DNA of 64,000 bases from Rebecca billardiae RCC1528 (taxonomy: Eukaryota > Protista > Haptophyta), in contig OZ251253.1 in the NCBI GenBank assembly GCA_965240325.2, positions 864,233 to 928,232 of the forward strand, in the 5' to 3' direction. Made by a program: the position numbers and the translations under genes. Positions 6,577 to 64,000 of the stretch are shown here, one piece after another. Within the stretch, counting starts at the first letter, position 1; each line of letters opens with the position of its first letter. The notes beneath the pieces were generated by a model. It did not search any database. It saw nothing but the letters and a program-made list of their open reading frames with translations, and was not told the DNA's origin.

Positions 6577-6823
6577 GGCGGTCACGCTTGCCGGCCGCCC
6601 TGGCGACGGAGCGCAAGGCCGGAGAGGCGAGAAAGGCCCCAAGCGGCGCCCGCCGGCCGCGCTCGCTGGTCAGGAGAGTGGCGACTTGGTGGCGAGCTGC
6701 AGATCTCCCGCCGCCGAGCGAGCGAGCCTTCCAGCGGCAGTCCGGAACCTTCGCGCAGGCTCGCAGCGCAGCCGCCCTGGTGGGGTGTACGCAGTGGTGC
6801 ACCGAGCAGGACCGCCCTGAGAG

Positions 6824-7379: not shown

Positions 7380-7453
<74 letters not shown>

Positions 7454-7996: not shown

Positions 7997-8041
<45 letters not shown>

Positions 8042-8704: not shown

Positions 8705-8912
8705 CTACCGCTTGTCAGAGCACGCGGACGGAAGGTTCCCGTCTGGCGATGAGGCATACAGTCGACTAAGAATAAGAGACTCACACAGCTTAGGCAGGCG
8801 AGACCGTGTTCCCGACGCGCACGCACATAGCATCAGCAGCTAACAGTACTGTATGATTGTATGATACATGCTGCATGCATTTTAACCGCACGGTACAACA
8901 CAGAGGGCCACG

Positions 8913-16702: not shown

Positions 16703-17743
16703 TCAGCGAGCAGCACCATCCGTGTCGGAGCAGGCTTCATCGTCGTCAGACGCCGACGAATCCGTCTCGTCCGAGTCCCGGTGGCAGCCCTCGGCTGCCG
16801 TGTCGCGCAGCACTAGCAGGCTGCTGCCGCCGACGACACCGCCGTCGCACGCCTCGTCGTCCGCCCAGCCCTCCGGCGGCACGCGCGCGGACGGGCCGAA
16901 CGCGGCGGCGAGCGCGCGCGCCACGCGCTCGTCCCGCGCGCTAAGCACCGTGGTCGAGTGCCGCACGTTGCACCATGGCTCGTCGAGCCGGCACAGCTGG
17001 CGGCGCGCCAGCGCCGCGAGCTCGGCCACGGCCCAGCCGCCCACGCGCGCGGGCAGCGGCGCGCCCGCGCCGCCGCCGCCCCAGGTGCGCTCGGCGTCGC
17101 CGCAGATGCCGCGGCCGGCCTCGCCGACGAGCACGCACGCGTGCACGCTGGGGCACGCGCGCACCGCGGCGCACCAGTCCTGCCCCAGCGGCATCCAGCA
17201 CACGAGCGCCACGTCGGGCGCGCACGCGGCCAGCGCGGCCTCGCAGCGCGCGCGCAGCACCGGGAACGCGGCGGCCGCGGGCAGCGCGGGGCAGCACGGC
17301 AGCGGGGACGCGTCCGACGCGATGAGCAGCACGCCGCTCTCGGGCTCGCCCCGCGCCGCCGCCGCGCGCGCGAGCTGCGCGCGCAGCAGGTGCGCCAGCC
17401 GGCCGCTGCCCGCGCCCAGCTCGAGCACGCGCAGCGCGCGCGCCGGCAGCAGCGGCAGCAGCGCGGCGCGCAGCGCGAGCAGCAGCGCGGCGAGCAGGCG
17501 CACGTGCTCGGCCGTGTGCACCTCGTAGAGCGGGTAGCCGCCGTTCGTCGCGCCGCGCGTGTACCGCGCCCACGCCGCGCACTGCGCGCACGCGCAGCGC
17601 ACCTCGCCGCGCGCGCCGGGCGCGGGCGCGTGCGCCTCCGGCCGCGCGGCCGCAAAGAGGCCGAACGCGGCCTCGAGCTCAGCGAGCGGCGGCGCGTGCG
17701 CGGGGCCGTGCAGCGCCGAGCGGGCGCGCGCGCGCGTGAGCAT
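16703..17743 (-). CDS. SAM-dependent methyltransferase-like protein
   Basis: Motif I LRVLELGAGSGRLA; downstream LIASD, VCWMP, VLVGE. Confidence 0.7.
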   Translation of the reverse strand: MLTRARARSALHGPAHAPPLAELEAAFGLFAAARPEAHAPAPGARGEVRCACAQCAAWARYTRGATNGGYPLYEVHTAEHVRLLAALLLALRAALLPLLPARALRVLELGAGSGRLAHLLRAQLARAAAARGEPESGVLLIASDASPLPCCPALPAAAAFPVLRARCEAALAACAPDVALVCWMPLGQDWCAAVRACPSVHACVLVGEAGRGICGDAERTWGGGGAGAPLPARVGGWAVAELAALARRQLCRLDEPWCNVRHSTTVLSARDERVARALAAAFGPSARVPPEGWADDEACDGGVVGGSSLLVLRDTAAEGCHRDSDETDSSASDDDEACSDTDGAAR

Positions 17744-44565: not shown

Positions 44566-45798
44566 TCACTGAGCCTGATGCGCTACGTCGAAGTCGAACT
44601 CGTCCGGGTCGTAGTCGGCCAGTTCCTCGTCCAGCACCAGGGACACGTAGTCCCCGGCGTCCGGCCACCACCACTTCTTCAGCCACGCCACGGCCTGCAA
44701 CAGATACCGATCCTTCGCCTCGCGCTGCGCCGCTGCTCTGGACAGCCCGCCAGCGCTGCTCACCTTGAAGAACGCGGCGCCGAGCGTGCGGAGCGCACAC
44801 CTCAGGCGCCGCGCGTCGTCCGTGCTGATCACGGCGAAGCACTCGTCACCGAGGGTGTGCTCGTCCGCGTCGGCGGGCAGCGGCACGTGCGCGAGTTCGC
44901 CCATCCGCACGGTGCCGTTCCAATCCACGCCGTCGAGGGCCCCCGCGTCGGGCGCGCCCTGCCCGCCGCCGACGATGCCGCCCGGCAGGTGCACCGCGCG
45001 GCCGCTCTCGACGCCCTCGCCCCGCGCGTACCCCCACTTGGCGCGCGCGTTCGCCAACCGCGCCTCGAGGCCGACCCAGCCGTCGAACTCGCACGTGAGG
45101 TAGACGTTGGCGAGGATGTGGTGCATCTGCGGCGCGTGCGCGGCCTGCTCGTTGTCGATGGCCGCGCCCTGCGGCGGCGCGAGGGCCGCGCGGTACCGCT
45201 GCGGCACAGGCGCGCCGTCGAGCTGCGTCGCGCCAATCTCCATCAGCGGGGAGCCGGCCCACTTCGGGAGGCCTTGCATCGCGCGGTTGCGCAGGAAGAC
45301 GCCCAAGCAGTCGGCCAGCACGAGGAGGTACCACGGGTGCGAGCCGAGGTGCGTCTCCGTGGCCTCGCCCAAGGCCGGCACTGGCGGCTTCACTTTGATC
45401 CCCACGCCGAGCTGCGAGAGGTTGCCAAAGAGGCCTGACAGGTGCTGCGCGCCCTTGCCCGCCATCTCTGCCTGCGCGCGGCGGCGGCAGGGGCGCGCCG
45501 TGAGCGCGGCGCGGCGCGGCCCGCCCCGTTCCGCCCGCGCGCCGCGCGCCGCGCGCACCTCGTGCTGGAAGGTCGACCCCGCGAGCCTGTTGTGGCGGAT
45601 CACGGAGAGCGGCCACAGGACGCGCCGCGCCGCGTGTGCGTGCGCCGCCACTGACTGGGCCGGATCCGGCAGCTGCGAGCTCGCCCCGTAGCTCTTCGGC
45701 ACCGCAAAGCGCGTGGCCAGGTCCGTGGCCGTGAAGCCCCACGTGGCCATCACGGCGTGCTCGGCCCGCACCACCTTGCACCCGCCCTCCCCGAGCAT
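44566..45798 (-). CDS. Hypothetical protein, probably 5'-truncated by the satellite array; in-frame intron 45472-45558
   Basis: Protein-like composition and GC3 bias; GT...GCTCAC...CAG intron; the frame stays open into the satellite. Confidence 0.65.
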   Translation of the reverse strand: MLGEGGCKVVRAEHAVMATWGFTATDLATRFAVPKSYGASSQLPDPAQSVAAHAHAARRVLWPLSVIRHNRLAGSTFQHEVRAARGARAERGGPRRAALTARPCRRRAQAEMAGKGAQHLSGLFGNLSQLGVGIKVKPPVPALGEATETHLGSHPWYLLVLADCLGVFLRNRAMQGLPKWAGSPLMEIGATQLDGAPVPQRYRAALAPPQGAAIDNEQAAHAPQMHHILANVYLTCEFDGWVGLEARLANARAKWGYARGEGVESGRAVHLPGGIVGGGQGAPDAGALDGVDWNGTVRMGELAHVPLPADADEHTLGDECFAVISTDDARRLRCALRTLGAAFFKVSSAGGLSRAAAQREAKDRYLLQAVAWLKKWWWPDAGDYVSLVLDEELADYDPDEFDFDVAHQAQ

Positions 45799-45804
45799 CA
45801 CCGC

Positions 45805-48800
45805 GCAACCTTGGCCGCCACCCGAGCTACGCGCGCTGGGCCGCACTGGCTCGCTCTGGGTGCCGCCCGGCGCTCACCGAAGGCGCGGCAGTTATTTATC
45901 TCGGTCGGGTGAGTGGCGGCCGAGTGTCACGACGCGCAGGGGGCGCCGGCGGCCTTCGCCAGGTGCTCCAGGCCGCGCAAAAGGTCGAATGCAACCTTGG
46001 CCGCCACCCGAGCTACGCGCGCTGGGCCGCACTGGCTCGCTCTGGGTGCCGCCAGGCGCTCACCGAAGGCGCTGCAGTTATTCATCTCGGTCGGGTGAGT
46101 GGCGGCCGAGTGTCACGACGCGCAGGGGGCGCCGGCGGCCTTCGCCAGGTGCTCCAGGCCGCGCAAAAGGTCGAATGCAACCTTGGCCGCCACCCGAGCT
46201 ACGCGCGCTGGGCCGCACTGGCTCGCTCTGGGTGCCGCCCGGCGCTCGCCGCGGCAGTTATTCATCTCGGTCGGGTGAGTGGCGGCCGAGTGTCACGATG
46301 CGCAAGGGGCGCCGGCGGCCTTCGCCAGGTGCTCCAGGCCGCGCAAAAGGTCGAATGCAACCTTGGCCGCCACCCGAGCTACGCGCGCTGGGCCGCCGAC
46401 TGGCTCGCTCTGGGTGCCGCCCTGCGCTCACAAGGCGCGGCAGTTATTCATCTCGGTCGGGTGAGTGGCGGCCGAGTGTCACGATGCGCAGGGGGCGCCG
46501 GCGGCCTTCGCCAGGTGCTCCAGGCCGCGCAAAAGGTCGAATGCAACCTTGGCCGCCACCCGAGCTACGCGCGCTGGGCCGCACTGGCTCGCTCTGGGTG
46601 CCGCCCGGCGCTCACCGCGGCAGTTATTTATCTCGGTCGGGTGAGTGGCGGCCGAGTGTCACGATGCGCAAGGGGCGCCGGCGGCCTTCGCCAGGTGCTC
46701 CAGGCCGCGCAAAAGGTCGAATGCAACCTTGGCCGCCACCCGAGCTACGCGCGCTGGGCCGCACTGGCTCGCTCTGGGTGCCGCCCGGCGCTCGCCGCGG
46801 CAGTTATTCATCTCGGTCGGGTGAGTGGCGGCCGAGTGTCACGATGCGCAAGGGGCGCCGGCGGCCTTCGCCAGGTGCTCCAGGCCGCGCAAAAGGTCGA
46901 ATGCAACCTTGGCCGCCACCCGAGCTACGCGCGCTGGGCCGCCGACTGGCTCGCTCTGGGTGCCGCCCTGCGCTCACAAGGCGCGGCAGTTATTCATCTC
47001 GGTCGGGTGAGTGGCGGCCGAGTGTCACGATGCGCAGGGGGCGCCGGCGGCCTTCGCCAGGTGCTCCAGGCCGCGCAAAAGGTCGAATGCAACCTTGGCC
47101 GCCACCCGAGCTACGCGCGCTGGGCCGCACTGGCTCGCTCTGGGTGCCGCCCGGCGCTCGCCGCGGCAGTTATTCATCTCGGTCGGGTGAGTGGCGGCCG
47201 AGTGTCACGATGCGCAAGGGGCGCCGGCGGCCTTCGCCAGGTGCTCCAGGCCGCGCAAAAGGTCGAATGCAACCTTGGCCGCCACCCGAGCTACGCGCGC
47301 TGGGCCGCCGACTGGCTCGCTCTGGGTGCCGCCCTGCGCTCACAAGGCGCGGCAGTTATTCATCTCGGTCGGGTGAGTGGCGGCCGAGTGTCACGATGCG
47401 CAGGGGGCGCCGGCGGCCTTCGCCAGGTGCTCCAGGCCGCGCAAAAGGTCGAATGCAACCTTGGCCGCCACCCGAGCTACGCGCGCTGGGCCGCACTGGC
47501 TCGCTCTGGGTGCCGCCCGGCGCTCACCGCGGCAGTTATTTATCTCGGTCGGGTGAGTGGCGGCCGAGTGTCACGATGCGCAAGGGGCGCCGGCGGCCTT
47601 CGCCAGGTGCTCCAGGCCGCGCAAAAGGTCGAATGCAACCTTGGCCGCCACCCGAGCTACGCGCGCTGGGCCGCACTGGCTCGCTCTGGGTGCCGCCCGG
47701 CGCTCACCGAAGGCGCGGCAGTTATTCATCTCGGTCGGGTAAGTGGCGGCCGAGTGTCACGATGCGCAGGAGCCGCCGGCGGCCTTCGCCAGATGCTCCA
47801 GGCCGCGCAAAAAGGTCGAATGCAACCTTGGCCGCCACCCGAGCTACGCGCGCTGGGCCGCACTGGCTCGCTCTGGGTGCCGCCCTGCGCTCACCGAAGG
47901 CGCGGCAGTTATTCATCTCGGTCGGGTGAGTGGCGGCCGAGTGTCACGATGCGCAGGGGGCGCCGGCGGCCTTCGACAGGTGCTCCAGGCCGCGCAAAAG
48001 GTCGAATGCAACCTTGGCCGCCACCCGAGCTACGCGCGCTGGGCCGCACTGGCTCGCTCTGGGTGCCGCCCGGCGCTCGCCGCGGCAGTTATTCATCTCG
48101 GTCGGGTGAGTGGCGGCCGAGTGTCACGATGCGCAGGAGCCGCCGGCGGCCTTCGCCAGATGCTCCAGGCCGCGCAAAAAGGTCGAATGCAACCTTGGCC
48201 GCCACCCGAGCTACGCGCGCTGGGCCGCACTGGCTCGCTCTGGGTGCCGCCCGGCGCTCACAAGGCGCGGCAGTTATTCATCTCGGTCGGGTGAGTGGCG
48301 GCCGAGTGTCACGATGCGCAGGGGGCGCCGGCGGCCTTCGCCAGGTGCTCCAGGCCGCGCAAAAGGTCGAATGCAACCTTGGCCGCCACCCGAGCTACGC
48401 GCGCTGGGCCGCACTGGCTCGCTCTGGGTGCCGCCCGGCGCTCACTGAAGGCGCGGCAGTTATTCATCTCGGTCGGGTGAGTGGCGGCCGAGTGTCACGA
48501 TGCGCAGGGGGCGCCGGCGGCCTTCGCCAGGTGCTCCAGGCCGCGCAAAAGGTCGAATGCAACCTTGGCCGCCACCCGAGCTACGCGCGCTGGGCCGCAC
48601 TGGCTCGCTCTGGGTGCCGCCCGGCGCTCACCGAAGGCGCGGCAGTTATTCATCTCGGTCGGGTAAGTGGCGGCCGAGTGTCACGATGCGCAGGAGCCGC
48701 CGGCGGCCTTCGCCAGGTGCTCCAGGCCGCGCAAAAGGTCGAATGCAACCTTGGCCGCCACCCGAGCTACGCGCGCTGGGCCGCACTGGCTCGCTCTGGG

Positions 48801-51800
48801 TGCCGCCCGGCGCTCACCGAAGGCGCGGCAGTTATTCATCTCGGTCGGGTGAGTGGCGGCCGAGTGTCACGACGCGCAGGGGGCGCCGGCGGCCTTCGCC
48901 AGGTGCTCCAGGCCGCGCAAAAGGTCGAATGCAACCTTGGCCGCCACCCGAGCTACGCGCGCTGGGCCACACTGGCTCGCTCTGGGTGCCGCCCGGCGCT
49001 CACCGAAGGCGCGGCAGTTATTCATCTCGGTCGGGTGAGTGGCGGCCGAGTGTCACGATGCGCAGGAGCCGCCGGCGGCCTTCGCCAGATGCTCCAGGCC
49101 GCGCAAAAGGTCGAATGCAACCTTGGCCGCCACCCGAGCTACGCGCGCTGGGCCGCACTGGCTCGCTCTGGGTGCCGCCCGGCGCTCACCGAAGGCGCGG
49201 CAGTTGTTCATCTCGGTCGGGTAAGTGGCGGCCGAGTGTCACGATGCGCAGGAGCCGCCGGCGGCCTTCGCCAGATGCTCCAGGCCGCGCAAAAGGTCGA
49301 ATGCAACCTTGGCCGCCACCCGAGCTACGCGCGCTGGGCCGCACTGGCTCGCTCTGGGTGCCGCCCGGCGCTCACCGAAGGCGCGGCAGTTATTTATCTC
49401 GGTCGGGTGAGTGGCGGCCGAGTGTCACGACGCGCAGGGGGCGCCGGCGGCCTTCGCCAGGTGCTCCAGGCCGCGCAAAAGGTCGAATGCAACCTTGGCC
49501 GCCACCCGAGCTACGCGCGCTGGGCCGCACTGGCTCGCTCTGGGTGCCGCCCGGCGCTCACAAGGCGCGGCAGTTATTCATCTCGGTCGGGTAAGTGGCG
49601 GCCGAGTGTCACGATGCGCAGGGGGCGCCGGCGGCCTTCGCCAGGTGCTCCAGGCCGCGCAAAAGGTCGAATGCAACCTTGGCCGCCACCTGAGCTACGC
49701 GCGCTGGGCCGCACTGGCTCGCTCTGGGTGCCGCCAGGCGCTCACAAGGCGCGGCAGTTATTCATCTCGGTCGGGTAAGTGGCGGCCGAGTGTCACGATG
49801 CGCAGGAGCCGCCGGCGGCCTTCGCCAGGTGCTCCAGGCCGCGCAAAAGGTCGAATGCAACCTTGGCCGCCACCCGAGCTACGCGCGCTGGGCCGCACTG
49901 GCTCGCTCTGGGTGCTGCCCTGCGCTCACAAGGCGCGGCAGTTATTCATCTCGGTCGGGTGAGTGGCGGCCGAGTGTCACGACGCGCAGGGGGCGCCGGC
50001 GGCCTTCGCCAGGTGCTCCAGGCCGCGCAAAAGGTCGAATGCAACCTTGGCCGCCACCCGAGCTACGCGCGCTGGGCCGCACTGGCTCGCTCTGGGTGCC
50101 GCCCGGCGCTCACCGAAGGCGCGGCAGTTATTCATCTCGGTCGGGTGAGTGGCGGCCGAGTGTCACGACGCGCAGGGGGCGCCGGCGGCCTTCGCCAGGT
50201 GCTCCAGGCCGCGCAAAAGGTCGAATGCAACCTTGGCCGCCACCCGAGCTACGCGCGCTGGGCCACACTGGCTCGCTCTGGGTGCCGCCCGGCGCTCACC
50301 GAAGGCGCGGCAGTTATTCATCTCGGTCGGGTAAGTGGCGGCCGAGTGTCACGATGCGCAGGAGCCGCCGGCGGCCTTCGCCAGGTGCTCCAGGCCGCGC
50401 AAAAGGTCGAATGCAACCTTGGCCGCCACCCGAGCTACGCGCGCTGGGCCGCACTGGCTCGCTCTGGGTGCCGCCAGGCGCTCGCCGCGGCAGTTATTTA
50501 TCTCGGTCGGGTGAGTGGCGGCCGAGTGTCACGATGCGCAAGGGGCGCCGGCGGCCTTCGCCAGGTGCTCCAGGCCGCGCAAAAGGTCGAATGCAACCTT
50601 GGCCGCCACCCGAGCTACGCGCGCTGGGCCGCACTGGCTCGCTCTGGGTGCCGCCAGGCGCTCACAAGGCGCGGCAGTTATTCATCTCGGTCGGGTGAGT
50701 GGCGGCCGAGTGTCACGATGCGCAGGGGGCGCCGGCGGCCTTCGCCAGGTGCTCCAGGCCGCGCAAAAGGTCGAATGCAACCTTGGCCGCCACCTGAGCT
50801 ACGCGCGCTGGGCCGCACTGGCTCGCTCTGGGTGCCGCCCGGCGCTCGCCGCGGCAGTTATTCATCTCGGTCGGGTGAGTGGCGGCCGAGTGTCACGATG
50901 CGCAAGGGGCGCCGGCGGCCTTCGCCAGGTGCTCCAGGCCGCGCAAAAGGTCGAATGCAACCTTGGCCGCCACCCGAGCTACGCGCGCTGGGCCGCACTG
51001 GCTCGCTCTGGGTGCCGCCCGGCGCTCACCGAAGGCGCGGCAGTTATTTATCTCGGTCGGGTGAGTGGCGGCCGAGTGTCACGACGCGCAGGGGGCGCCG
51101 GCGGCCTTCGCCAGGTGCTCCAGGCCGCGCAAAAGGTCGAATGCAACCTTGGCCGCCACCCGAGCTACGCGCGCTGGGCCGCACTGGCTCGCTCTGGGTG
51201 CCGCCCGGCGCTCACCGAAGGCGCGGCAGTTATTCATCTCGGTCGGGTGAGTGGCGGCCGAGTGTCACGACGCGCAGGGGGCGCCGGCGGCCTTCGCCAG
51301 GTGCTCCAGGCCGCGCAAAAGGTCGAATGCAACCTTGGCCGCCACCCGAGCTACGCGCGCTGGGCCACACTGGCTCGCTCTGGGTGCCGCCCGGCGCTCA
51401 CCGAAGGCGCGGCAGTTATTCATCTCGGTCGGGTGAGTGGCGGCCGAGTGTCACGATGCGCAGGAGCCGCCGGCGGCCTTCGCCAGATGCTCCAGGCCGC
51501 GCAAAAGGTCGAATGCAACCTTGGCCGCCACCCGAGCTACGCGCGCTGGGCCGCACTGGCTCGCTCTGGGTGCCGCCCGGCGCTCACCGAAGGCGCGGCA
51601 GTTGTTCATCTCGGTCGGGTAAGTGGCGGCCGAGTGTCACGATGCGCAGGAGCCGCCGGCGGCCTTCGCCAGATGCTCCAGGCCGCGCAAAAGGTCGAAT
51701 GCAACCTTGGCCGCCACCCGAGCTACGCGCGCTGGGCCGCACTGGCTCGCTCTGGGTGCCGCCCGGCGCTCACCGAAGGCGCGGCAGTTATTTATCTCGG

Positions 51801-54800
51801 TCGGGTGAGTGGCGGCCGAGTGTCACGACGCGCAGGGGGCGCCGGCGGCCTTCGCCAGGTGCTCCAGGCCGCGCAAAAGGTCGAATGCAACCTTGGCCGC
51901 CACCCGAGCTACGCGCGCTGGGCCGCACTGGCTCGCTCTGGGTGCTGCCCGGCGCTCACAAGGCGCGGCAGTTATTCATCTCGGTCGGGTAAGTGGCGGC
52001 CGAGTGTCACGATGCGCAGGGGGCGCCGGCGGCCTTCGCCAGGTGCTCCAGGCCGCGCAAAAGGTCGAATGCAACCTTGGCCGCCACCTGAGCTACGCGC
52101 GCTGGGCCGCACTGGCTCGCTCTGGGTGCCGCCAGGCGCTCACAAGGCGCGGCAGTTATTCATCTCGGTCGGGTAAGTGGCGGCCGAGTGTCACGATGCG
52201 CAGGAGCCGCCGGCGGCCTTCGCCAGGTGCTCCAGGCCGCGCAAAAGGTCGAATGCAACCTTGGCCGCCACCCGAGCTACGCGCGCTGGGCCGCACTGGC
52301 TCGCTCTGGGTGCTGCCCTGCGCTCACAAGGCGCGGCAGTTATTCATCTCGGTCGGGTGAGTGGCGGCCGAGTGTCACGACGCGCAGGGGGCGCCGGCGG
52401 CCTTCGCCAGGTGCTCCAGGCCGCGCAAAAGGTCGAATGCAACCTTGGCCGCCACCCGAGCTACGCGCGCTGGGCCGCACTGGCTCGCTCTGGGTGCCGC
52501 CCGGCGCTCACCGAAGGCGCGGCAGTTATTCATCTCGGTCGGGTGAGTGGCGGCCGAGTGTCACGACGCGCAGGGGGCGCCGGCGGCCTTCGCCAGGTGC
52601 TCCAGGCCGCGCAAAAGGTCGAATGCAACCTTGGCCGCCACCCGAGCTACGCGCGCTGGGCCACACTGGCTCGCTCTGGGTGCCGCCCGGCGCTCACCGA
52701 AGGCGCGGCAGTTATTCATCTCGGTCGGGTAAGTGGCGGCCGAGTGTCACGATGCGCAGGAGCCGCCGGCGGCCTTCGCCAGGTGCTCCAGGCCGCGCAA
52801 AAGGTCGAATGCAACCTTGGCCGCCACCCGAGCTACGCGCGCTGGGCCGCACTGGCTCGCTCTGGGTGCCGCCAGGCGCTCGCCGCGGCAGTTATTTATC
52901 TCGGTCGGGTGAGTGGCGGCCGAGTGTCACGATGCGCAAGGGGCGCCGGCGGCCTTCGCCAGGTGCTCCAGGCCGCGCAAAAGGTCGAATGCAACCTTGG
53001 CCGCCACCCGAGCTACGCGCGCTGGGCCGCACTGGCTCGCTCTGGGTGCCGCCAGGCGCTCACAAGGCGCGGCAGTTATTCATCTCGGTCGGGTGAGTGG
53101 CGGCCGAGTGTCACGATGCGCAGGGGGCGCCGGCGGCCTTCGACAGGTGCTCCAGGCCGCGCAAAAGGTCGAATGCAACCTTGGCCGCCACCCGAGCTAC
53201 GCGCGCTGGGCCGCACTGGCTCGCTCTGGGTGCCGCCCGGCGCTCGCCGCGGCAGTTATTCATCTCGGTCGGGTGAGTGGCGGCCGAGTGTCACGACGCG
53301 CAGGGGGCGCCGGCGGCCTTCGCCAGGTGCTCCAGGCCGCGCAAAAGGTCGAATGCAACCTTGGCCGCCACCCGAGCTACGCGCGCTGGGCCGCACTGGC
53401 TCGCTCTGGGTGCCGCCCGGCGCTCACCGAAGGCGCGGCAGTTATTCATCTCGGTCGGGTGAGTGGCGGCCGAGTGTCACGACGCGCAGGGGGCGCCGGC
53501 GGCCTTCGCCAGGTGCTCCAGGCCGCGCAAAAGGTCGAATGCAACCTTGGCCGCCACCCGAGCTACGCGCGCTGGGCCACACTGGCTCGCTCTGGGTGCC
53601 GCCCGGCGCTCACCGAAGGCGCGGCAGTTATTCATCTCGGTCGGGTAAGTGGCGGCCGAGTGTCACGATGCGCAGGAGCCGCCGGCGGCCTTCGCCAGGT
53701 GCTCCAGGCCGCGCAAAAGGTCGAATGCAACCTTGGCCGCCACCCGAGCTACGCGCGCTGGGCCGCACTGGCTCGCTCTGGGTGCCGCCAGGCGCTCGCC
53801 GCGGCAGTTATTTATCTCGGTCGGGTGAGTGGCGGCCGAGTGTCACGATGCGCAAGGGGCGCCGGCGGCCTTCGCCAGGTGCTCCAGGCCGCGCAAAAGG
53901 TCGAATGCAACCTTGGCCGCCACCCGAGCTACGCGCGCTGGGCCGCACTGGCTCGCTCTGGGTGCCGCCAGGCGCTCACAAGGCGCGGCAGTTATTCATC
54001 TCGGTCGGGTAAGTGGCGGCCGAGTGTCACGATGCGCAGGAGCCGCCGGCGGCCTTCGCCAGGTGCTCCAGGCCGCGCAAAAGGTCGAATGCAACCTTGG
54101 CCGCCACCCGAGCTACGCGCGCTGGGCCGCACTGGCTCGCTCTGGGTGCCGCCCGGCGCTCACAAGGCGCGGCAGTTATTCATCTCGGTCGGGTGAGTGG
54201 CGGCCGAGTGTCACGACGCGCAGGGGGCGCCGGCGGCCTTCGCCAGGTGCTCCAGGCCGCGCAAAAGGTCGAATGCAACCTTGGCCGCCACCCGAGCTAC
54301 GCGCGCTGGGCCGCACTGGCTCGCTCTGGGTGCCGCCCGGCGCTCACCGAAGGCGCGGCAGTTATTCATCTCGGTCGGGTGAGTGGCGGCCGAGTGTCAC
54401 GACGCGCAGGGGGCGCCGGCGGCCTTCGCCAGGTGCTCCAGGCCGCGCAAAAGGTCGAATGCAACCTTGGCCGCCACCCGAGCTACGCGCGCTGGGCCAC
54501 ACTGGCTCGCTCTGGGTGCCGCCCGGCGCTCACCGAAGGCGCGGCAGTTATTCATCTCGGTCGGGTGAGTGGCGGCCGAGTGTCACGATGCGCAGGGGGC
54601 GCCGGCGGCCTTCGACAGGTGCTCCAGGCCGCGCAAAAGGTCGAATGCAACCTTGGCCGCCACCCGAGCTACGCGCGCTGGGCCGCACTGGCTCGCTCTG
54701 GGTGCCGCCCGGCGCTCGCCGCGGCAGTTATTCATCTCGGTCGGGTGAGTGGCGGCCGAGTGTCACGATGCGCAGGAGCCGCCGGCGGCCTTCGCCAGAT

Positions 54801-56670
54801 GCTCCAGGCCGCGCAAAAAGGTCGAATGCAACCTTGGCCGCCACCCGAGCTACGCGCGCTGGGCCGCACTGGCTCGCTCTGGGTGCCGCCCGGCGCTCAC
54901 AAGGCGCGGCAGTTATTCATCTCGGTCGGGTGAGTGGCGGCCGAGTGTCACGATGCGCAGGGGGCGCCGGCGGCCTTCGCCAGGTGCTCCAGGCCGCGCA
55001 AAAGGTCGAATGCAACCTTGGCCGCCACCCGAGCTACGCGCGCTGGGCCGCACTGGCTCGCTCTGGGTGCCGCCCGGCGCTCACTGAAGGCGCGGCAGTT
55101 ATTCATCTCGGTCGGGTGAGTGGCGGCCGAGTGTCACGATGCGCAGGGGGCGCCGGCGGCCTTCGCCAGGTGCTCCAGGCCGCGCAAAAGGTCGAATGCA
55201 ACCTTGGCCGCCACCTGAGCTACGCGCGCTGGGCCGCACTGGCTCGCTCTGGGTGCCGCCCGGCGCTCGCCGCGGCAGTTATTCATCTCGGTCGGGTGAG
55301 TGGCGGCCGAGTGTCACGATGCGCAAGGGGCGCCGGCGGCCTTCGCCAGGTGCTCCAGGCCGCGCAAAAGGTCGAATGCAACCTTGGCCGCCACCCGAGC
55401 TACGCGCGCTGGGCCGCACTGGCTCGCTCTGGGTGCCGCCCGGCGCTCACCGAAGGCGCGGCAGTTATTTATCTCGGTCGGGTGAGTGGCGGCCGAGTGT
55501 CACGATGCGCAGGGGGCGCCGGCGGCCTTCGCCAGGTGCTCCAGGCCGCGCAAAAGGTCGAATGCAACCTTGGCCGCCACCCGAGCTACGCGCGCTGGGC
55601 CGCACTGGCTCGCTCTGGGTGCCGCCCGGCGCTCACTGAAGGCGCGGCAGTTATTCATCTCGGTCGGGTGAGTGGCGGCCGAGTGTCACGATGCGCAGGG
55701 GGCGCCGGCGGCCTTCGCCAGGTGCTCCAGGCCGCGCAAAAGGTCGAATGCAACCTTGGCCGCCACCCGAGCTACGCGCGCTGGGCCGCACTGGCTCGCT
55801 CTGGGTGCCGCCCGGCGCTCGCCGCGGCAGTTATTCATCTCGGTCGGGTGAGTGGCGGCCGAGTGTCACGATGCGCAAGGGGCGCCGGCGGCCTTCGCCA
55901 GGTGCTCCAGGCCGCGCAAAAGGTCGAATGCAACCTTGGCCGCCACCCGAGCTACGCGCGCTGGGCCGCCGACTGGCTCGCTCTGGGTGCCGCCCTGCGC
56001 TCACAAGGCGCGGCAGTTATTCATCTCGGTCGGGTAAGTGGCGGCCGAGTGTCACGATGCGCAGGAGCCGCCGGCGGCCTTCGCCAGATGCTCCAGGCCG
56101 CGCAAAAGGTCGAATGCAACCTTGGCCGCCACCCGAGCTACGCGCGCTGGGCCGCACTGGCTCGCTCTGGGACTGGGTGCCGCCCGGCGCTCACTGAAGG
56201 CGCGGCAGTTGTTCATCTCGGTCGGGTAAGTGGCGGCCGAGTGTCACGATGCGCAAGGGGCGCCGGCGGCCTTCGCCAGGTGCTCCAGGCCGCGCAAAAG
56301 GTCGAATGCAACCTTGGCCGCCACCCGAGCTACGCGCGCTGGGCCGCACTGGCTCGCTCTGGGACTGGGTGCCGCCCGGCGCTCACTGAAGGCGCGGCAG
56401 TTGTTCATCTCGGTCGGGTAAGTGGCGGCCGAGTGTCACGATGCGCAGGGGCCGCCGGCGGCCTTCGCCAGGTGCTCCAGGCCGCGCAAAAGGTCGAATG
56501 CAACCTTGGCCGCCACCCGAGCTACGCGCGCTGGGCCGCCGACTGGCTCGCTCTGGGTGCCGCCCTGTGCTCACAAGGCGCGGCAGTTATTCATCTCGGT
56601 CGGGTGAGTGGCGGCCGAGTGTCACGATGCGCAGGGGGCGCCGGCGGCCTTCGCCAGGTGCTCCAGGCCG
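45805..56670. repeat. Subtelomeric satellite, 180-192 bp monomers, ~59 copies
   Basis: Unit GCAACCTTGGCCGCCACCCGAG...GCGCAAAAGGTCGAAT repeated head-to-tail; periodic 61-aa pseudo-ORFs in the track. Confidence 0.98.
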
Positions 56671-56681
56671 TAGAAGTATGT

Positions 56682-56794
56682 TTTCTCGAGATTGACCGAG
56701 CCGAATCCTCTCAAAATTGGAGGGCCTCTAGCCCTTCCCATTTCCATGGCAGAGCCCAAGTCTCGTTGAAATCGGTTCGGTCAATCTCGAGAAA
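56682..56794. repeat. 23-bp inverted repeat around a 67-bp spacer (second copy 60746-60858)
   Basis: TTTCTCGAGATTGACCGAGCCGA ... TCGGTTCGGTCAATCTCGAGAAA, one mismatch. Confidence 0.9.
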
Positions 56795-56815
56795 TTCCCA
56801 TTTTAGTACCGGCGA

Positions 56816-57164
56816 CCCTAACCACGACCCTAACCCTAACCCTTACCACGACCCTAACCCTTACCTGCGCCCTAACCCTTACCACGACCCTAACCCTTAC
56901 CTGCGCCCTAACCCTTACCTGCGCCCTAACCCTTACCTGCGCCCTAACCCTTACCTGCGCCCTAACCCTTACCTGCGCCCTAACCCTTACCTGCGCCCTA
57001 ACCCTTACCTGCGCCCTAACCCTTACCTGCGCCCTAACCCTTACCTGTGCCCTAACCCTTACCTGCGCCCTAACCCTTACCTGCGCCCTAACCCTTACCT
57101 GTGCCCTAACCCTTACCTGCGCCCTAACCCTTACCTGCGCCCTAACCCTCACCCTCACCCTCAC
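56816..57164 (-). repeat. Inverted telomere-variant 18-mer array (CCCTAACCCTTACCTGCG)n
   Basis: About 17-19 units, each containing CCCTAA, opposite in orientation to the terminal TTAGGG. Confidence 0.95.
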
Positions 57165-57641
57165 ATTGTACATTTGGAATGTAAATTGTACATTTGGGGT
57201 GTAGTACATTGTACATTCGGAAATGTACATTGTACATTCGGAATGTACATTGTACATTCGGAAATGTACATTGTACATTCGGAAATGTACATTGTACATT
57301 TGGATACATTGTACATTTGGAATGTAAATTTTACATTTGGAGTGTAGTACACTGTAGATTCGGAAATGTACATTGTACATTCGAAAATGCACATTGTACA
57401 TATGGAATGTACTACATTGTACATTCGGATCCATTCGATCATCAGATGTACAGCATGCAATCGAAAAGTGTACGAATGGTACACAGTGTACTGTTGCAAT
57501 GTACACTCTGATACATTCAGATGTATATCAATCAAAAGTTCACAAAGTGTACACATATATGTACATTCAAAATGCACATTCGGATACAGTCATATGTACA
57601 ACCAAGAAGTGTACAAAGTGTACAAATGTGTACATTCAAAA
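57165..57641. repeat. AT-rich TGTACA-palindrome minisatellite (degenerate ~21-mer)
   Basis: ACATTGTACATTCGGAAATGT variants with many TGTACA sites. Confidence 0.9.
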
Positions 57642-57930
57642 TAGGGTTAGGGTTAGGGTTAGGGTTAGGGTTAGGGTTAGGGTTAGGGTTAGGGTTAGGG
57701 TTAGGGTTAGGGTTAGGGTTAGGGTTAGGGTTAGGGTTAGGGTTAGGGTTAGGGTTAGGGTTAGGGTTAGGGTTAGGGTTAGGGTTAGGGTTAGGGTTAG
57801 GGTTAGGGTTAGGGGTTAAGGTAGGTTAGGGTTAGGGTTAGGTTAGGTTAGGGTTAGGGTTAGGGTTAGGGTTAGGGTTAGGGTTAGGGTTAGGGGTTAG
57901 GGTTAGGGTTAGGGTTAGGGTTAGGGTTAG

Positions 57931-57962
<32 letters not shown>

Positions 57963-57988
57963 GGTTAGGGTTAGGGTTAGGGTTAGGG

Positions 57989-58029
<41 letters not shown>

Positions 58030-58246
58030 GGTTAGGGTTAGGGTTAGGGTTAGGGTTAGGGTTAGGGGTTAGGGTTAGGGTTAGGGTTAGGGTTAGGGTT
58101 AGGGTTAGGGTTAGGGTTAGGGTTAGGGTTAGGGTTAGGGTTAGGGTTAGGTTAGGGTTAGGGGTTAGGGGTTAGGGTTAGGGTTAGGGTTAGGGTTAGG
58201 GTTAGGGTTAGGGTTAGGGTTAGGGTTAGGGGGTTAGGGTTAGGGG
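57642..58246 (+). repeat. Interstitial (TTAGGG)n telomeric tract, ~600 bp
   Basis: Seen directly. Confidence 0.98.
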
Positions 58247-59245
58247 CAGGGCCTCCTAACCAAATACGTGTGCGCCCCCGGAGCACTCTGTGAGGTTGAG
58301 GAGCGCATCGGCCTCGGAGCGCAGCGGCGCAGCCGCTGCGCTCCTCGGCCTCCTCGCCTAATTACTAACCCTAAAACTACTAATACTAATAACTAAATAC
58401 TAATTACTAATACAAAAACTAAAACTAGTAATCACTAATTCTATAACTAAAAACTAATACTAATACTAATACCCCTCCTCCCCCCCTCCCTCAATATTTG
58501 GGTGTATTGTGGGGGCTGCGCCCCCACACCCCCGCCTCCTAACCCCCCTCCTACTACCCCCCTACTACCCCTCCTACCCCCCTACTACCCCCCCTCCCAC
58601 CACCCACCTCCTCCCCAGCCTCCCCTTCTACTACACTTCATCTCCCACCCCCTAGAGGCACTGCCAGAGGGCCTGACACCAGTGCGGGCCATCTTTGACG
58701 AATTCTTGCGAGCCACCACCGCATTTTTAATAAACAAGTGCACTTGCTCAAAGAGAGAATTTTGTCTTCAGAATGTTCCCTCAAAACATCAGCAAAATCG
58801 AAAAATATTTGGTGCACCTGCCAGTGGGACTTGCACCTGGCGCCTATGTGTTTGCACCCATGAAAAAATCTAAGTCTTGGTGGCTGTACTTTCAAAAAAA
58901 ATACAAACTTGAGGAACGTCTTCTTTCTATATGTAGATTTTGTCTGCAAATTATGAGAAAATGCAAAAAAGCTATGCTACTAATGGTACTGCTTAGTAGT
59001 AGTTTTCTATAAGTAGGGGTATTAGTAGGAGGGGGTTACTAGGAGGGGGTTAGTAGGGGGTTAGTAGTGGTTTTAGTTTTAGGTAAACCTTTAGACTTTT
59101 CGGGGGGAGCGATTTGATTTTGATATTTTCAGAATTTCTAAACGACTTCGTATGCAAGTGACGAAACCCTAACCTATGGCATAGTTAGCAAAATGTGACT
59201 TTTTGGACAAAACTTCAGGGAGTGTTGCCCCACTTCAGGGAAGCC
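58247..59245. other. 1-kb AT-rich insert between telomeric tracts, with strand-asymmetric inverted arms and hairpins
   Basis: Much lower GC than the genic region; CTA/CCC-rich left arm, TAG/GGG-rich right arm; no convincing ORF. Confidence 0.8.
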
Positions 59246-59263
59246 TAGGTTAGGGTTAGGGTT

Positions 59264-61890
59264 AACCTTGGCCGCCACCTGAGCTACGCGCGCTGGGCCG
59301 CACTGGCTCGCTCTGGGTGCCGCCCGGCGCTCGCCGCGGCAGTTATTCATCTCGGTCGGGTGAGTGGCGGCCGAGTGTCACGATGCGCAAGGGGCGCCGG
59401 CGGCCTTCGCCAGGTGCTCCAGGCCGCGCAAAAGGTCGAATGCAACCTTGGCCGCCACCCGAGCTACGCGCGCTGGGCCGCACTGGCTCGCTCTGGGTGC
59501 CGCCCGGCGCTCACCGAAGGCGCGGCAGTTATTTATCTCGGTCGGGTGAGTGGCGGCCGAGTGTCACGATGCGCAGGGGGCGCCGGCGGCCTTCGCCAGG
59601 TGCTCCAGGCCGCGCAAAAGGTCGAATGCAACCTTGGCCGCCACCCGAGCTACGCGCGCTGGGCCGCACTGGCTCGCTCTGGGTGCCGCCCGGCGCTCAC
59701 TGAAGGCGCGGCAGTTATTCATCTCGGTCGGGTGAGTGGCGGCCGAGTGTCACGATGCGCAGGGGGCGCCGGCGGCCTTCGCCAGGTGCTCCAGGCCGCG
59801 CAAAAGGTCGAATGCAACCTTGGCCGCCACCCGAGCTACGCGCGCTGGGCCGCACTGGCTCGCTCTGGGTGCCGCCCGGCGCTCGCCGCGGCAGTTATTC
59901 ATCTCGGTCGGGTGAGTGGCGGCCGAGTGTCACGATGCGCAAGGGGCGCCGGCGGCCTTCGCCAGGTGCTCCAGGCCGCGCAAAAGGTCGAATGCAACCT
60001 TGGCCGCCACCCGAGCTACGCGCGCTGGGCCGCCGACTGGCTCGCTCTGGGTGCCGCCCTGCGCTCACAAGGCGCGGCAGTTATTCATCTCGGTCGGGTA
60101 AGTGGCGGCCGAGTGTCACGATGCGCAGGAGCCGCCGGCGGCCTTCGCCAGATGCTCCAGGCCGCGCAAAAGGTCGAATGCAACCTTGGCCGCCACCCGA
60201 GCTACGCGCGCTGGGCCGCACTGGCTCGCTCTGGGACTGGGTGCCGCCCGGCGCTCACTGAAGGCGCGGCAGTTGTTCATCTCGGTCGGGTAAGTGGCGG
60301 CCGAGTGTCACGATGCGCAAGGGGCGCCGGCGGCCTTCGCCAGGTGCTCCAGGCCGCGCAAAAGGTCGAATGCAACCTTGGCCGCCACCCGAGCTACGCG
60401 CGCTGGGCCGCACTGGCTCGCTCTGGGACTGGGTGCCGCCCGGCGCTCACTGAAGGCGCGGCAGTTGTTCATCTCGGTCGGGTAAGTGGCGGCCGAGTGT
60501 CACGATGCGCAGGGGCCGCCGGCGGCCTTCGCCAGGTGCTCCAGGCCGCGCAAAAGGTCGAATGCAACCTTGGCCGCCACCCGAGCTACGCGCGCTGGGC
60601 CGCCGACTGGCTCGCTCTGGGTGCCGCCCTGTGCTCACAAGGCGCGGCAGTTATTCATCTCGGTCGGGTGAGTGGCGGCCGAGTGTCACGATGCGCAGGG
60701 GGCGCCGGCGGCCTTCGCCAGGTGCTCCAGGCCGTAGAAGTATGTTTTCTCGAGATTGACCGAGCCGAATCCTCTCAAAATTGGAGGGCCTCTAGCCCTT
60801 CCCATTTCCATGGCAGAGCCCAAGTCTCGTTGAAATCGGTTCGGTCAATCTCGAGAAATTCCCATTTTAGTACCGGCGACCCTAACCACGACCCTAACCC
60901 TAACCCTTACCACGACCCTAACCCTTACCTGCGCCCTAACCCTTACCACGACCCTAACCCTTACCTGCGCCCTAACCCTTACCTGCGCCCTAACCCTTAC
61001 CTGCGCCCTAACCCTTACCTGCGCCCTAACCCTTACCTGCGCCCTAACCCTTACCTGCGCCCTAACCCTTACCTGCGCCCTAACCCTTACCTGCGCCCTA
61101 ACCCTTACCTGTGCCCTAACCCTTACCTGCGCCCTAACCCTTACCTGCGCCCTAACCCTTACCTGTGCCCTAACCCTTACCTGCGCCCTAACCCTTACCT
61201 GCGCCCTAACCCTCACCCTCACCCTCACATTGTACATTTGGAATGTAAATTGTACATTTGGGGTGTAGTACATTGTACATTCGGAAATGTACATTGTACA
61301 TTCGGAATGTACATTGTACATTCGGAAATGTACATTGTACATTCGGAAATGTACATTGTACATTTGGATACATTGTACATTTGGAATGTAAATTTTACAT
61401 TTGGAGTGTAGTACACTGTAGATTCGGAAATGTACATTGTACATTCGAAAATGCACATTGTACATATGGAATGTACTACATTGTACATTCGGATCCATTC
61501 GATCATCAGATGTACAGCATGCAATCGAAAAGTGTACGAATGGTACACAGTGTACTGTTGCAATGTACACTCTGATACATTCAGATGTATATCAATCAAA
61601 AGTTCACAAAGTGTACACATATATGTACATTCAAAATGCACATTCGGATACAGTCATATGTACAACCAAGAAGTGTACAAAGTGTACAAATGTGTACATT
61701 CAAAATAGGGTTAGGGTTAGGGTTAGGGTTAGGGTTAGGGTTAGGGTTAGGGTTAGGGTTAGGGTTAGGGTTAGGGTTAGGGTTAGGGTTAGGGTTAGGG
61801 TTAGGGTTAGGGTTAGGGTTAGGGTTAGGGTTAGGGTTAGGGTTAGGGTTAGGGGTTAAGGTAGGTTAGGGTTAGGGTTAGGTTAGGTTA
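59264..61890 (+). repeat. Near-exact duplicate of 55200-57850 (8 satellite monomers, spacer, inverted 18-mers, TGTACA block, telomere start)
   Basis: Constant 4064-bp offset (55300/59364, 56781/60845, 57521/61585) with the same diagnostic variants. Confidence 0.97.
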
Positions 61891-62716
61891 GGGTTAGGGT
61901 TAGGGGTTAGGGTTAGGGTTAGGGTTAGGGTTAGGGTTAGGTTAGGGTTAGGGTTAGGGTTAGGGTTAGGGTTAGGGTTAGGGTTAGGGTTAGGGTTAGG
62001 GGTTAGGGTTAGGGTTAGGGTTAGGGTTAGGGTTAGGGTTAGGGTTAGGGTTAGGGTTAGGGTTAGGGTTAGGGTTAGGGTTAGGGTTTAGGGTTAGGTT
62101 AGGGTTAGGGTTAGGGTTAGGGTTAGGGTTAGGGTTAGGGTTAGGTTAGGGTTAGGGTTAGGGTTAGGGTTAGGGTAGGGTTAGGGTTAGGGTTAGGGTT
62201 AGGGTTAGGGTTAGGGTTAGGGTTAGGGTTAGGGTTAGGGTTAGGGTTAGGGTTAGGGTTAGGGTTAGGGTTAGGGTTAGGGTTAGGGGTTAGGGTTAGG
62301 GTTAGGGTTAGGGTTAGGGTTAGGGTTAGGGTTAGGGTTAGGGTTAGGGTTAGGGTTAGGGTTAGGGTTAGGGTTAGGGTTAGGGTTTAGGGGTTAGGGT
62401 TAGGGTTAGGGTTAGGGTTAGGGTTAGGGTTAGGGTTAGGGGTTAGGGTTAGGGTTAGGGTTAGGGTTAGGGTTAGGGTTAGGGTTAGGGTTAGGGGTTA
62501 GGGTTAGGGTTAGGGTTAGGGTTAGGGGTTAGGGTTAGGGTTAGGGTTAGGGTTAGGGTTAGGGTTAGGGTTAGGGTTAGGGTTAGGGTTAGGGTTAGGG
62601 TTAGGGTTAGGGTTAGGGTTAGGGTTAGGGTTAGGGTTAGGGTTAGGGGTTAGGGTTAGGGTTAGGGTTAGGGTTAGGGTTAGGGGTTAGGGTTAGGGTT
62701 AGGGGTTAGGTTAGGG

Positions 62717-62757
<41 letters not shown>

Positions 62758-62780
62758 GGTTAGGTTAGGGTTAGGGTTAG

Positions 62781-62818
<38 letters not shown>

Positions 62819-63074
62819 GGTTAGGGGTTAGGGGTTAGGGTTAGGGTTAGGGGTTAGGGTTAGGGTTAGGGTTAGGGGTTAGGGGTTAGGGTTTAGGGGT
62901 TAGGGTTAGGGTTAGGGTTAGGGTTAGGGTTAGGTTAGGGTTAGGGGTTAGGGTTAGGGTTAGGGTTAGGGTTAGGGTTAGGGGTTAGGGTTAGGGTTAG
63001 GGTTAGGGTTAGGGTTAGGGTTAGGGGGTTAGGGTTAGGGTTAGGGTTAGGGTTAGGTTAGGGTTGGGTTAGGG

Positions 63075-63141
<67 letters not shown>

Positions 63142-63622
63142 GGTTAGGGTTAGGGTTAGGGTTAGGGTTAGGGTTAGGGGTTAGGGTTAGGGTTAGGGTT
63201 AGGGTTAGGGTTAGGTTAGGGTTAGGGGTTAGGGGGTTAGGGTTAGGGTTAGGGTTAGGGGTTAGGGTTTAGGGGTTAGGGTTAGGGTTAGGGTTAGGGT
63301 TAGGGTTAGGGTTAGGTTAGGGTTAGGGTTAGGGTTAGGGTTAGGGTTAGGGTTAGGGTTAGGTTTAGGGTTAGGGTTAGGGTTAGGGTTAGGGTTAGGG
63401 GTTAGGGTTAGGGTTAGGGTTAGGGTTAGGGTTAGGGTTAGGGTTAGGGTTAGGGTTAGGGTTAGGTTAGGGTTAGGGTTAGGGTTAGGGTTAGGGTTAG
63501 GGTTAGGGTTAGGGTTAGGTTAGGGTTAGGGTTAGGGTTAGGGTTAGGGTTAGGGTTAGGGTTAGGGTTAGGGTTAGGGTTAGGGTTAGGGTTAGGGTTA
63601 GGGTTAGGGTTAGGGGTTAGGG

Positions 63623-63663
<41 letters not shown>

Positions 63664-63839
63664 GGTTAGGGTTAGGGTTAGGGTTAGGGTTAGGGTTTAG
63701 GGGTTAGGTTAGGGTTAGGGTTAGGGTTAGGGTTAGGGGTTAGGGTTAGGGTTAGGGTTAGGGTTAGGGTTTAGGGTTTAGGGTTAGGGGGGTTAGGGTT
63801 AGGTTAGGGGGTTAGGGTTAGGGTTAGGGTTAGGGTTAG

Positions 63840-63873
<34 letters not shown>

Positions 63874-64000
63874 GTTAGGGTTAGGGTTAAGGGTTAGGGT
63901 TAGGGTTAGGGTTAGGGTTAGGGTTAGGGTTAGGGTTAGGGTTAGGGTTAGGGTTAGGGTTAGGGTTAGGGTTAGGGTTAGGGTTAGGGTTAGGGTTAGG
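61706..64000 (+). repeat. Terminal telomere (TTAGGG)n
   Basis: About 2.3 kb of TTAGGG to the end of the window. Confidence 0.99.

What the first reader, a model, noticed from the sequence alone, without database searches (positions are those of the whole stretch)
45805..59275. Both array starts fall at the same position in the monomer
Seen: the main array begins ...CCGC|GCAACCTTGG (45805) and the duplicate begins ...GGGTT|AACCTTGG (59264), within 2 nt of each other in a ~184-bp unit although the flanks are unrelated. This site lies in the AAGGT-N8-ACCTT hairpin, and the second junction forms the palindrome GGTTAACC. Inference: a defined terminus or preferred cleavage/template-switch site, so the cassette may behave as a non-autonomous chromosome-capping mobile unit. 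Only two junctions are available, so chance (a few percent) is not excluded.
Basis: partly seen in the sequence, partly recalled or inferred. Interest (0 to 1): 0.75.

Follow-up and report, generated by a model that had tools for sequence, protein, structure and literature searches.

The report
Satellite array starts coincide by chance
Two blocks of a 186-base repeat at this algal chromosome tip do begin at the same point of the repeat unit. The second block is only a fresh exact copy of the chromosome's last 2.4 kb, and the match in starting point is no better than a 3-8% coincidence.

Summary
The main array (45805-56670, 58.9 x 186 bp) and the distal array (59264-60734) start within 0-3 nt of the same monomer position, beside unrelated flanks.

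The distal array is not an independent array. Positions 59264-61705 are a 0-mismatch copy of 55200-57641, that is the last 7.9 monomers plus the subtelomeric "X" module. The copy runs on into the same telomere variant block. It is joined through a 1-nt overlap to a 19-nt telomerase-type seed that follows a 600-bp internal telomere and a 1-kb orphan insert.

The satellite occurs on only one other end in the 72-Mb assembly (contig 39, left end). There it starts 21-25 nt upstream. Chance odds for the coincidence are 2.7% for the pair, 8% for any pair of three starts, and 4-6% for all three within about 25 nt.

The hairpin is no better than shuffled sequence, and Rfam finds no ribozyme.

The element with a truly fixed start in this genome is the X module: 35 of 36 junctions on 20 ends. 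The same scan had already noted X on other ends of this genome.

Best reading: the end was re-capped recently by copying or capturing its own terminal 2.4 kb, and the shared phase is chance or a soft preference for the monomer's only A/T-rich patch. An assembly artefact is not excluded because no reads were available.

The parts
44566..45804 (-). Proximal flank of the main array: a unique, ORF-like stretch. The minus-strand ORF 44566-45846 runs 42 nt into the array.
   Evidence: no Pfam family, no paralogue in the genome, and no homologue other than itself.
45805..56670 (+). Main 186-bp satellite array, 58.9 copies with monomers of 180-192 nt. It starts at phase -2 to 0 and ends at phase 168 (...CCAGGCC).
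55200..57641 (+). Parent segment of the duplication: the last 7.9 monomers plus the X module.
   Evidence: 0 mismatches against 59264-61705; the same monomer-length series, 180, 186, 186, 180, 186, 192, 192.
56671..57641 (+). X module: a palindromic core starting (G)TAG|AAGTATG, then inverted CCCTAA-like repeats, an 18-mer x17.8 and an A/T-rich repeat.
   Evidence: present on most chromosome ends, always pointing outward, with the same first base at 35 of 36 junctions.
57642..58245 (+). Interstitial telomere tract of about 100 TTAGGG repeats. At 0.6 kb it is shorter than the terminal tracts seen, which are about 0.8-3.1 kb.
58246..59245 (.). Orphan insert of about 1 kb with lower GC than the flanking DNA by eye (not computed) and imperfect mirrored arms: C-rich 11-mers and TACTAA repeats on the left, the G-rich complement on the right.
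   Evidence: unique in the genome, no match in the metagenome or viral scans, no Rfam family.
59246..59264 (+). Telomerase-type seed of 19 nt, TAGGTTAGGGTTAGGGTTA. Its last A is shared with the array.
   Evidence: the same TAGGTT(T)AGGG opening begins 11 of 21 telomere or seed tracts listed at the ends I examined.
59264..60734 (+). Duplicate array, 7.9 monomers, starting at phase 0 to +1.
60735..61705 (+). Duplicate X module.
61706..64000 (+). Terminal telomere, at least 2.3 kb, reaching the contig end. It shares the proximal variant block with the interstitial tract.

Best explanation
This chromosome end is a patchwork built outward in steps. (1) A satellite-bearing end was joined to unique DNA at 45804/45805 with 2 nt of overlap. 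(2) An X module was added onto the array where it ended, at phase 168. (3) Telomerase capped it. (4) The telomere, then about 0.6 kb long, acquired a 1-kb orphan piece, whose end telomerase healed with a short seed. (5) That barely capped seed was extended by a copy of the same chromosome's, or its sister's, last 2.44 kb and telomere. The copy arose either by microhomology-primed break-induced copying to the end of the template, or by end-joining of a broken-off terminal fragment. The start of that copy fell at AACCTTGG in monomer 51 of the parent array. Its agreement with the phase of the old array start is most likely coincidence. At most it reflects a soft preference of breaks or joins for the monomer's only A/T-rich patch. 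The satellite is a passenger, one of many end-specific 182-216-bp satellites in this genome, and not a mobile capping unit with a defined terminus. Shown: the layout, the exact copy, the seed, and the phases. Inferred: the order of events, and copying versus capture.
For: Exact copy of 55200-57641 with the same monomer-length series. The copy continues into the telomere: the same odd repeat block follows 27 canonical repeats in one tract and 23 in the other. The junction has a 1-nt overlap to a 19-nt seed. The seed opens with TAGGTT(T)AGGG, like 11 of 21 de novo tract starts listed at the ends I examined, so the junction looks native. The satellite lies on two ends only. The third start is at phase -21, with CCAG microhomology reaching -25, fixed by comparison with two paralogous flanks. 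Null odds are 2.7-8%. Nine of the monomer's 25 A residues lie in the 27-nt arc that holds 4 of the 5 junctions. The hairpin is not above shuffles, and no ribozyme family appears at E<=10. Most of the ends I fetched carry their own 182-216-bp satellite just inside the X modules. Microhomology junctions, interstitial telomere tracts and translocated terminal pieces of this kind are documented in Chlamydomonas telomerase mutants (PMC10620057).
Against: All ways of counting give odds near 3-8%, so a real preference is not excluded. Four of five satellite junctions fall in one 27-nt arc (4.7%). In a second satellite family, two apparently independent starts (C22R, C32L) lie about 13 nt apart of 182, but this rests on alignment edges only. 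The 8-nt palindrome at the junction is unexplained. The 0-mismatch copy and the only long internal telomere among 21 ends would also fit a mis-assembly.
Confidence: 0.55

Rival explanations
1. Assembly artefact. The last 5.7 kb (58246-64000) comes from a chimeric or concatenated long read, or from a mis-join, and the real chromosome ends with the telomere that starts at 57642. The second 'array start' would then not be a feature of this chromosome.
For: 0 mismatches in 2442 nt. This is the only internal telomere of 100 repeats or more among 21 ends examined. The position is the very end of a contig. The telomeres of this assembly carry uncorrected long-read-type noise, for example a 234-nt CTTTAA-like block inside the contig 17 telomere. 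The insert is found nowhere else in the genome.
Against: An assembler does not invent junction sequences. The seed before the copy has the genome's own de novo telomere opening. No adapter-like string lies in the insert, though this was a weak test with strings recalled from memory. The two telomere tracts differ in repeat counts (27 vs 23, and 7 vs 2) while sharing the variant block, as expected for two places in real molecules. The internal tract is shorter than the terminal telomeres seen, as expected for a worn end. Stacked re-duplications at 99.8% identity exist on another end, contig 13.
Confidence: 0.22
2. There is a real preferred site at phase 0. This could be a fragile or nuclease-sensitive point at the loop-stem border of the small hairpin. 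It could also be the fixed 3' end of an inward (antisense) transcript that is reverse-transcribed onto chromosome ends. Either way, copies of the satellite cassette would tend to begin at AACCTTGG.
For: Two junctions 0-3 nt apart beside unrelated flanks. All three starts lie within 21-25 nt (4-6% by chance). The array end on contig 37 (phase 168) and the array start on contig 39 (phase 161-165) also nearly coincide. The genome clearly has machinery that adds a unit with a base-exact start, the X module, onto seeds.
Against: The third independent start misses by 21 nt. The hairpin is no stronger than shuffles. No ribozyme family was found. The copy passed seven other phase-0 sites before starting. 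X joins after ...TAG, whereas this copy joins after ...GGGTT(A). The satellite is on only two ends.
Confidence: 0.15

Closest known systems
Sultan subtelomeric arrays of Chlamydomonas reinhardtii and the end rearrangements seen in its telomerase mutants (PMC8287924, PMC10620057)
   Same: End-specific tandem arrays lie just inside the telomere. Segmental duplication occurs within one subtelomere. New ends are made from translocated pieces, leaving interstitial telomere tracts and junctions with a few bases of microhomology. Junction position within the repeat unit is used there as a marker of de novo events.
   Different: The organism and sequences differ. Here the arrays are separated from the telomere by a second, genome-wide element (X) with a fixed start. 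The state is found in a reference assembly, not in a telomerase mutant.
Y' element amplification and telomere capture by break-induced replication in budding yeast (own knowledge, not checked here)
   Same: Short telomere tracts are left between tandem copies of a terminal element. A worn end is rescued by copying another end out to its telomere.
   Different: Yeast uses long homology (Y', TG tracts). Here the overlap is 1 nt, and the copy begins inside a satellite, so microhomology-mediated copying or end-joining is needed.
Telomere-attached retroelements: HeT-A/TART of Drosophila and endonuclease-deficient Penelope-like elements such as Athena (own knowledge, not checked here)
   Same: Units are stacked head-to-tail at chromosome ends, always in one orientation, with short telomere repeats between them. 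This fits the X module of this genome.
   Different: No reverse-transcriptase gene, poly(A) or telomere-complementary tail was found in the satellite cassette. The satellite lacks a fixed start and is confined to two ends.

Membership tests
Terminal segmental duplication / telomere capture (BIR, MMBIR or end-joining of a terminal fragment) | The copy is collinear with an existing chromosome end and runs out to its telomere. | tested here: met
   2442 nt with 0 mismatches; a shared telomere variant block.
Terminal segmental duplication / telomere capture (BIR, MMBIR or end-joining of a terminal fragment) | The junction shows none to a few bases of microhomology and no target-site duplication. 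| tested here: met
   overlaps of 2 nt (GC), 1 nt (A) and 4 nt (CCAG) at the three starts.
Terminal segmental duplication / telomere capture (BIR, MMBIR or end-joining of a terminal fragment) | The structure is present in single DNA molecules (read support). | not testable with these tools
Mobile chromosome-capping unit with a defined terminus (telomere-targeted retroelement-like) | All independent copies start at the same base. | tested here: not met
   The satellite starts at phase -2..0, 0..+1 and -21..-25. As a positive control, X starts at one base in 35 of 36 junctions.
Mobile chromosome-capping unit with a defined terminus (telomere-targeted retroelement-like) | It is spread over many chromosome ends. 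| tested here: not met
   69 monomer matches, all on contig 37 (right end) and contig 39 (left end).
Mobile chromosome-capping unit with a defined terminus (telomere-targeted retroelement-like) | It has a unit of fixed content. | tested here: not met
   Copy numbers are 58.9, 7.9 and 3.7. The distal ends lie at phase 168 and 105.
Satellite with a self-cleaving ribozyme (hammerhead, HDV-like, twister and others) | Each monomer holds a recognisable ribozyme fold with a cleavage site at the junction phase. | tested here: inconclusive
   no ribozyme family at E<=10 on either strand. HDV-like folds can escape sequence-based models. The stretch that another note proposed (45948-46019, minus strand) would cut about 27 nt from phase 0, not at it.
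Hairpin-directed breakage site | The hairpin is markedly more stable than expected for the composition. | tested here: not met
   -5.6 and -7.5 kcal/mol, z = +0.23 and -0.47. 116 and 66 of 200 shuffles fold at least as well.

The most novel reading that the evidence does not exclude
Phase 0 is the 3' end of inward-running subtelomeric transcripts. The same end-adding machinery that attaches X modules base-exactly onto telomerase seeds occasionally uses a read-through RNA that ends in the satellite. This would carry satellite monomers along, like 3' transduction by L1 elements, and would found satellite arrays that always begin at AACCTTGG.
Probability: 0.08. Interest if true: 0.75.

Novelty: new member of a known kind. 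Interest (0 to 1): 0.3.

Why it matters
If the phase match were real, it would point to a site-specific step in how this alga rebuilds worn chromosome ends, either cleavage or a fixed RNA end. As it stands, the match is weak evidence. The solid result is descriptive. The window holds a very fresh example of an end re-capped by its own terminal 2.4 kb behind an internal telomere and a telomerase seed, in a genome where ends are patchworks of end-specific satellites and a fixed-start X element. That makes this end a convenient place to test, with reads or PCR, how such additions are primed.

Tried and rejected
- Ribozyme in the monomer: Rfam with permissive filters on both strands gave only noise.
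- Hairpin hot spot: folding is no better than shuffles.
- Progenitor single-copy monomer in the flanks or on contig 39: none.
- Truncated-gene test for the proximal flank: the ORF has no Pfam family, paralogue or homologue, so truncation cannot be judged.
- More junctions from public data: an exact-pattern scan of metagenome contigs found nothing.
- Origin of the 1-kb insert: no match in metagenome or viral scans and no RNA family. Elsewhere in the genome it resembles only (TATTAG)n microsatellites.
- Adapter strings at the internal telomere/insert border: none above shuffles. This was a weak test with strings from memory.
- Extending the phase test to sister satellites: the 183-bp family on contigs 12, 13, 15 and 22 shares its flank, so its junction is one event.
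- Telomerase adding onto the array's minus strand at CCAAGGTT: rejected, because the added strand there reads C-rich.
Full report
**Setting**

The window is the right end of contig 37 (positions 864233-928232) of a 72-Mb, 41-contig assembly. The DNA is 63-83% G+C up to 56 kb and about 50-56% beyond, and the window ends in at least 2.3 kb of TTAGGG repeats. It is a eukaryotic chromosome end and, despite the vertebrate-type telomere repeat, not human. Earlier notes of this scan call the organism a probable haptophyte alga; I did not test that.

**Layout**

| Window positions | Feature |
|---|---|
| up to 45804 | Unique ORF-like DNA |
| 45805-56670 | Satellite array, 58.9 copies, modal 186 nt |
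| 56671-57641 | "X" module: palindromic core, inverted CCCTAA-like repeats, an 18-mer x17.8, an A/T-rich repeat |
| 57642-58245 | About 100 TTAGGG repeats |
| 58246-59245 | Orphan insert of about 1 kb with imperfect mirrored arms |
| 59246-59264 | 19-nt tract TAGGTTAGGGTTAGGGTTA |
| 59264-60734 | 7.9 satellite monomers |
| 60735-61705 | X module again |
| 61706-64000 | Telomere to the contig end |

**The observation**

I take phase 0 as the first A of AACCTTGG.
- The main array's own sequence begins at phase -2 to 0. The flank's last bases GC match the monomer, a 2-nt ambiguity.
- The distal array begins at 0 to +1, because the A at 59264 is shared with the telomere tract.
- The two crossovers are therefore 0-3 nt apart.
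- The flanks are unrelated, and GGTTAACC and AAGGT-N8-ACCTT are both there.

**What the distal array is**

The distal array is not an independent array.
- Shifting by 4064 nt, positions 59264-61705 equal 55200-57641 with 0 mismatches in 2442 nt.
- The monomer-length series 180, 186, 186, 180, 186, 192, 192 is that of the last monomers of the main array.
- The copy continues into the telomere. Both tracts have the same odd block (TTAGGGGTTAAGGTAGG, two canonical repeats, two TTAGG), after 27 canonical repeats in one and 23 in the other.

The second "start" is therefore the left breakpoint of a very recent re-copy of the chromosome's last 2.44 kb plus telomere.

**The seed**

The tract before the copy opens with TAGGTTAGGG. 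At the ends I examined, 11 of 21 listed telomere or seed tracts open with TAGGTT(T)AGGG directly after non-telomeric DNA. I read this as the signature of de novo addition by this organism's telomerase (inference). On that reading, the end of the insert had been healed and was then over-built.

**How many junctions exist**

A 26-nt monomer pattern with up to 3 mismatches hits 65 times on contig 37 and 4 times on contig 39, and nowhere else (one search agrees).
- Contig 39's left end has 3.7 monomers in the same outward orientation.
- Its proximal flank belongs to a subtelomeric repeat family with two paralogues in the window, ending at 34915 and 30545.
- Comparison with those paralogues shows that the flank ends at ...GGCCCAG and the satellite begins at GTCGCGCAAAAGG. 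That is phase -21, with CCAG microhomology back to -25.
- The distal ends of the arrays lie at phase 168 (contig 37) and 105 (contig 39).

**Chance**

| Event | Probability by chance |
|---|---|
| Two starts within 2 nt | 2.7% |
| Any pair among three starts within 2 nt | 8.0% |
| Three starts within 21-25 nt | 4.1-5.7% |
| At least four of five junctions within 27 nt | 4.7% |
| Distal start within 2 nt of the main start, if a 1-nt overlap with the seed's A is required (only 25 of 186 positions qualify, two of them within 2 nt of the main start) | 8% |

- All figures are post hoc and marginal.
- The arc that holds four junctions is the monomer's only A/T-rich patch, with 9 of its 25 A residues. 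That offers a mundane reason for loose clustering.

**Tests of special mechanisms**

- The hairpin folds no better than shuffled sequence: z = +0.23 and -0.47.
- Rfam with permissive filters finds no self-cleaving ribozyme on either strand. The stretch another note proposed for an HDV-like fold would cut about 27 nt from phase 0.
- Telomerase addition onto the array's minus strand is excluded, because the sequence following CCAAGGTT on that strand is C-rich.

**What a defined terminus looks like in this genome**

- The X core occurs on most chromosome ends, often two or three times in a stack and always pointing outward.
- At 35 of 36 junctions on 20 ends it begins at the same base (TAG|AAGTATG).
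- Upstream sequences are unrelated: unique DNA, or earlier modules cut at varying points. They often end in a short telomerase-type seed.
- This confirms earlier notes of the same scan about an end-added, outward-pointing element.

The satellite behaves differently. It sits on two ends only, has three different copy numbers, and has no common start.

Most of the ends I fetched carry their own 182-216-bp satellite just inside the X modules, and some families are shared by sets of ends.
- Where flanks are shared, the junction is one event. This is the case for the 183-bp family on contigs 12, 13, 15 and 22.
- The 182-bp family gives one apparently independent pair (contigs 22 and 32) about 13 nt apart, but only by alignment edges.

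**Real or artefact**

For an artefact:
- The copy is perfect.
- This is the only internal telomere of 100 repeats or more among 21 ends.
- It lies at the very end of a contig.
- The assembly keeps long-read-type noise in its telomeres, such as a 234-nt CTTTAA-like block on contig 17.

Against an artefact:
- The junction carries the genome's native seed signature.
- No adapter-like string was found, although this was a weak test.
- The two telomere tracts differ in repeat counts while sharing the variant block.
- The internal tract (0.6 kb) is shorter than the terminal telomeres seen (about 0.8-3.1 kb), as expected for a worn end.
- Another end (contig 13) has a stacked 2.2-kb re-duplication at 99.8% identity, though that one starts at the canonical X base.

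**Mechanism**

Most likely (0.55), a barely capped seed end was extended by copying the chromosome's own or its sister's terminal 2.44 kb. Microhomology-primed break-induced copying or end-joining of a broken terminal fragment would both do this. The phase match would then be chance or a soft A/T-patch preference. Comparable junctions, interstitial telomere tracts and translocated terminal pieces are described for Chlamydomonas telomerase mutants (PMC10620057). End-specific subtelomeric arrays are described for the wild type (PMC8287924).

The rivals are an assembly artefact (0.22) and a real preferred site (0.15). The boldest form of the second is an RNA 3' end used by the X-adding machinery.

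**Verdict**

The defined-terminus and mobile-unit reading of the satellite is not supported. The feature is a new example of known subtelomere dynamics.

Noticed in passing
L013 (contig 39:1-10000), 5215-7847, minus strand: A 2.63-kb dispersed repeat with at least 40 copies at about 100% identity across the genome, evidently a very young transposable element. It ends exactly at the first base of an X module on contig 39, so either it inserted at that border or X was added onto its end.
   Followed up: partly
L024 (contig 17:1-10000), reverse-complement positions 8522-8754: A 234-nt block of CTTTAA-like hexamers inside an otherwise regular TTAGGG telomere. It looks like a long-read base-calling error left in the assembly.
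   Followed up: no
Window 59246; also contig ends C39L, C7L, C15L, C29L, C32L, C7R, C22R, C5R and C13R: De novo telomere tracts and the short seeds under stacked modules mostly open with TAGGTT(T)AGGG. This suggests a fixed first register of telomerase on non-telomeric ends.
   Followed up: partly
Window 30241-35460 and 30636-30652: Copies of a subtelomeric repeat family that lies 4-12 kb from the tip on 30 or more other ends sit here 29-34 kb from the tip. Beside them is a relic CCTAGGTTAGGG. This may be an older position of the chromosome end.
   Followed up: partly
Window 58246-59245: An orphan insert of about 1 kb between telomere tracts, lower in GC than the flanking DNA by eye (not computed). 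It has a 19-bp GC hairpin at 58310-58350, TACTAA repeats, C-rich 11-mers, and their G-rich complement 450-650 nt further on. Its origin is unknown.
   Followed up: partly
Contig ends in L016-L035: Most of the chromosome ends I fetched carry their own tandem satellite of 182-216 bp directly inside the X modules. Families are shared by pairs or quartets of ends.
   Followed up: partly
L018+L019 (contig 13 right end), local 6519-8685 and 15128-17290: A long form of the X module (18-mer, A/T-rich part, a GC-rich unit and a 222-bp satellite) is stacked twice at 99.8% identity. About 6 kb is inserted in the core of the outer copy.
   Followed up: partly
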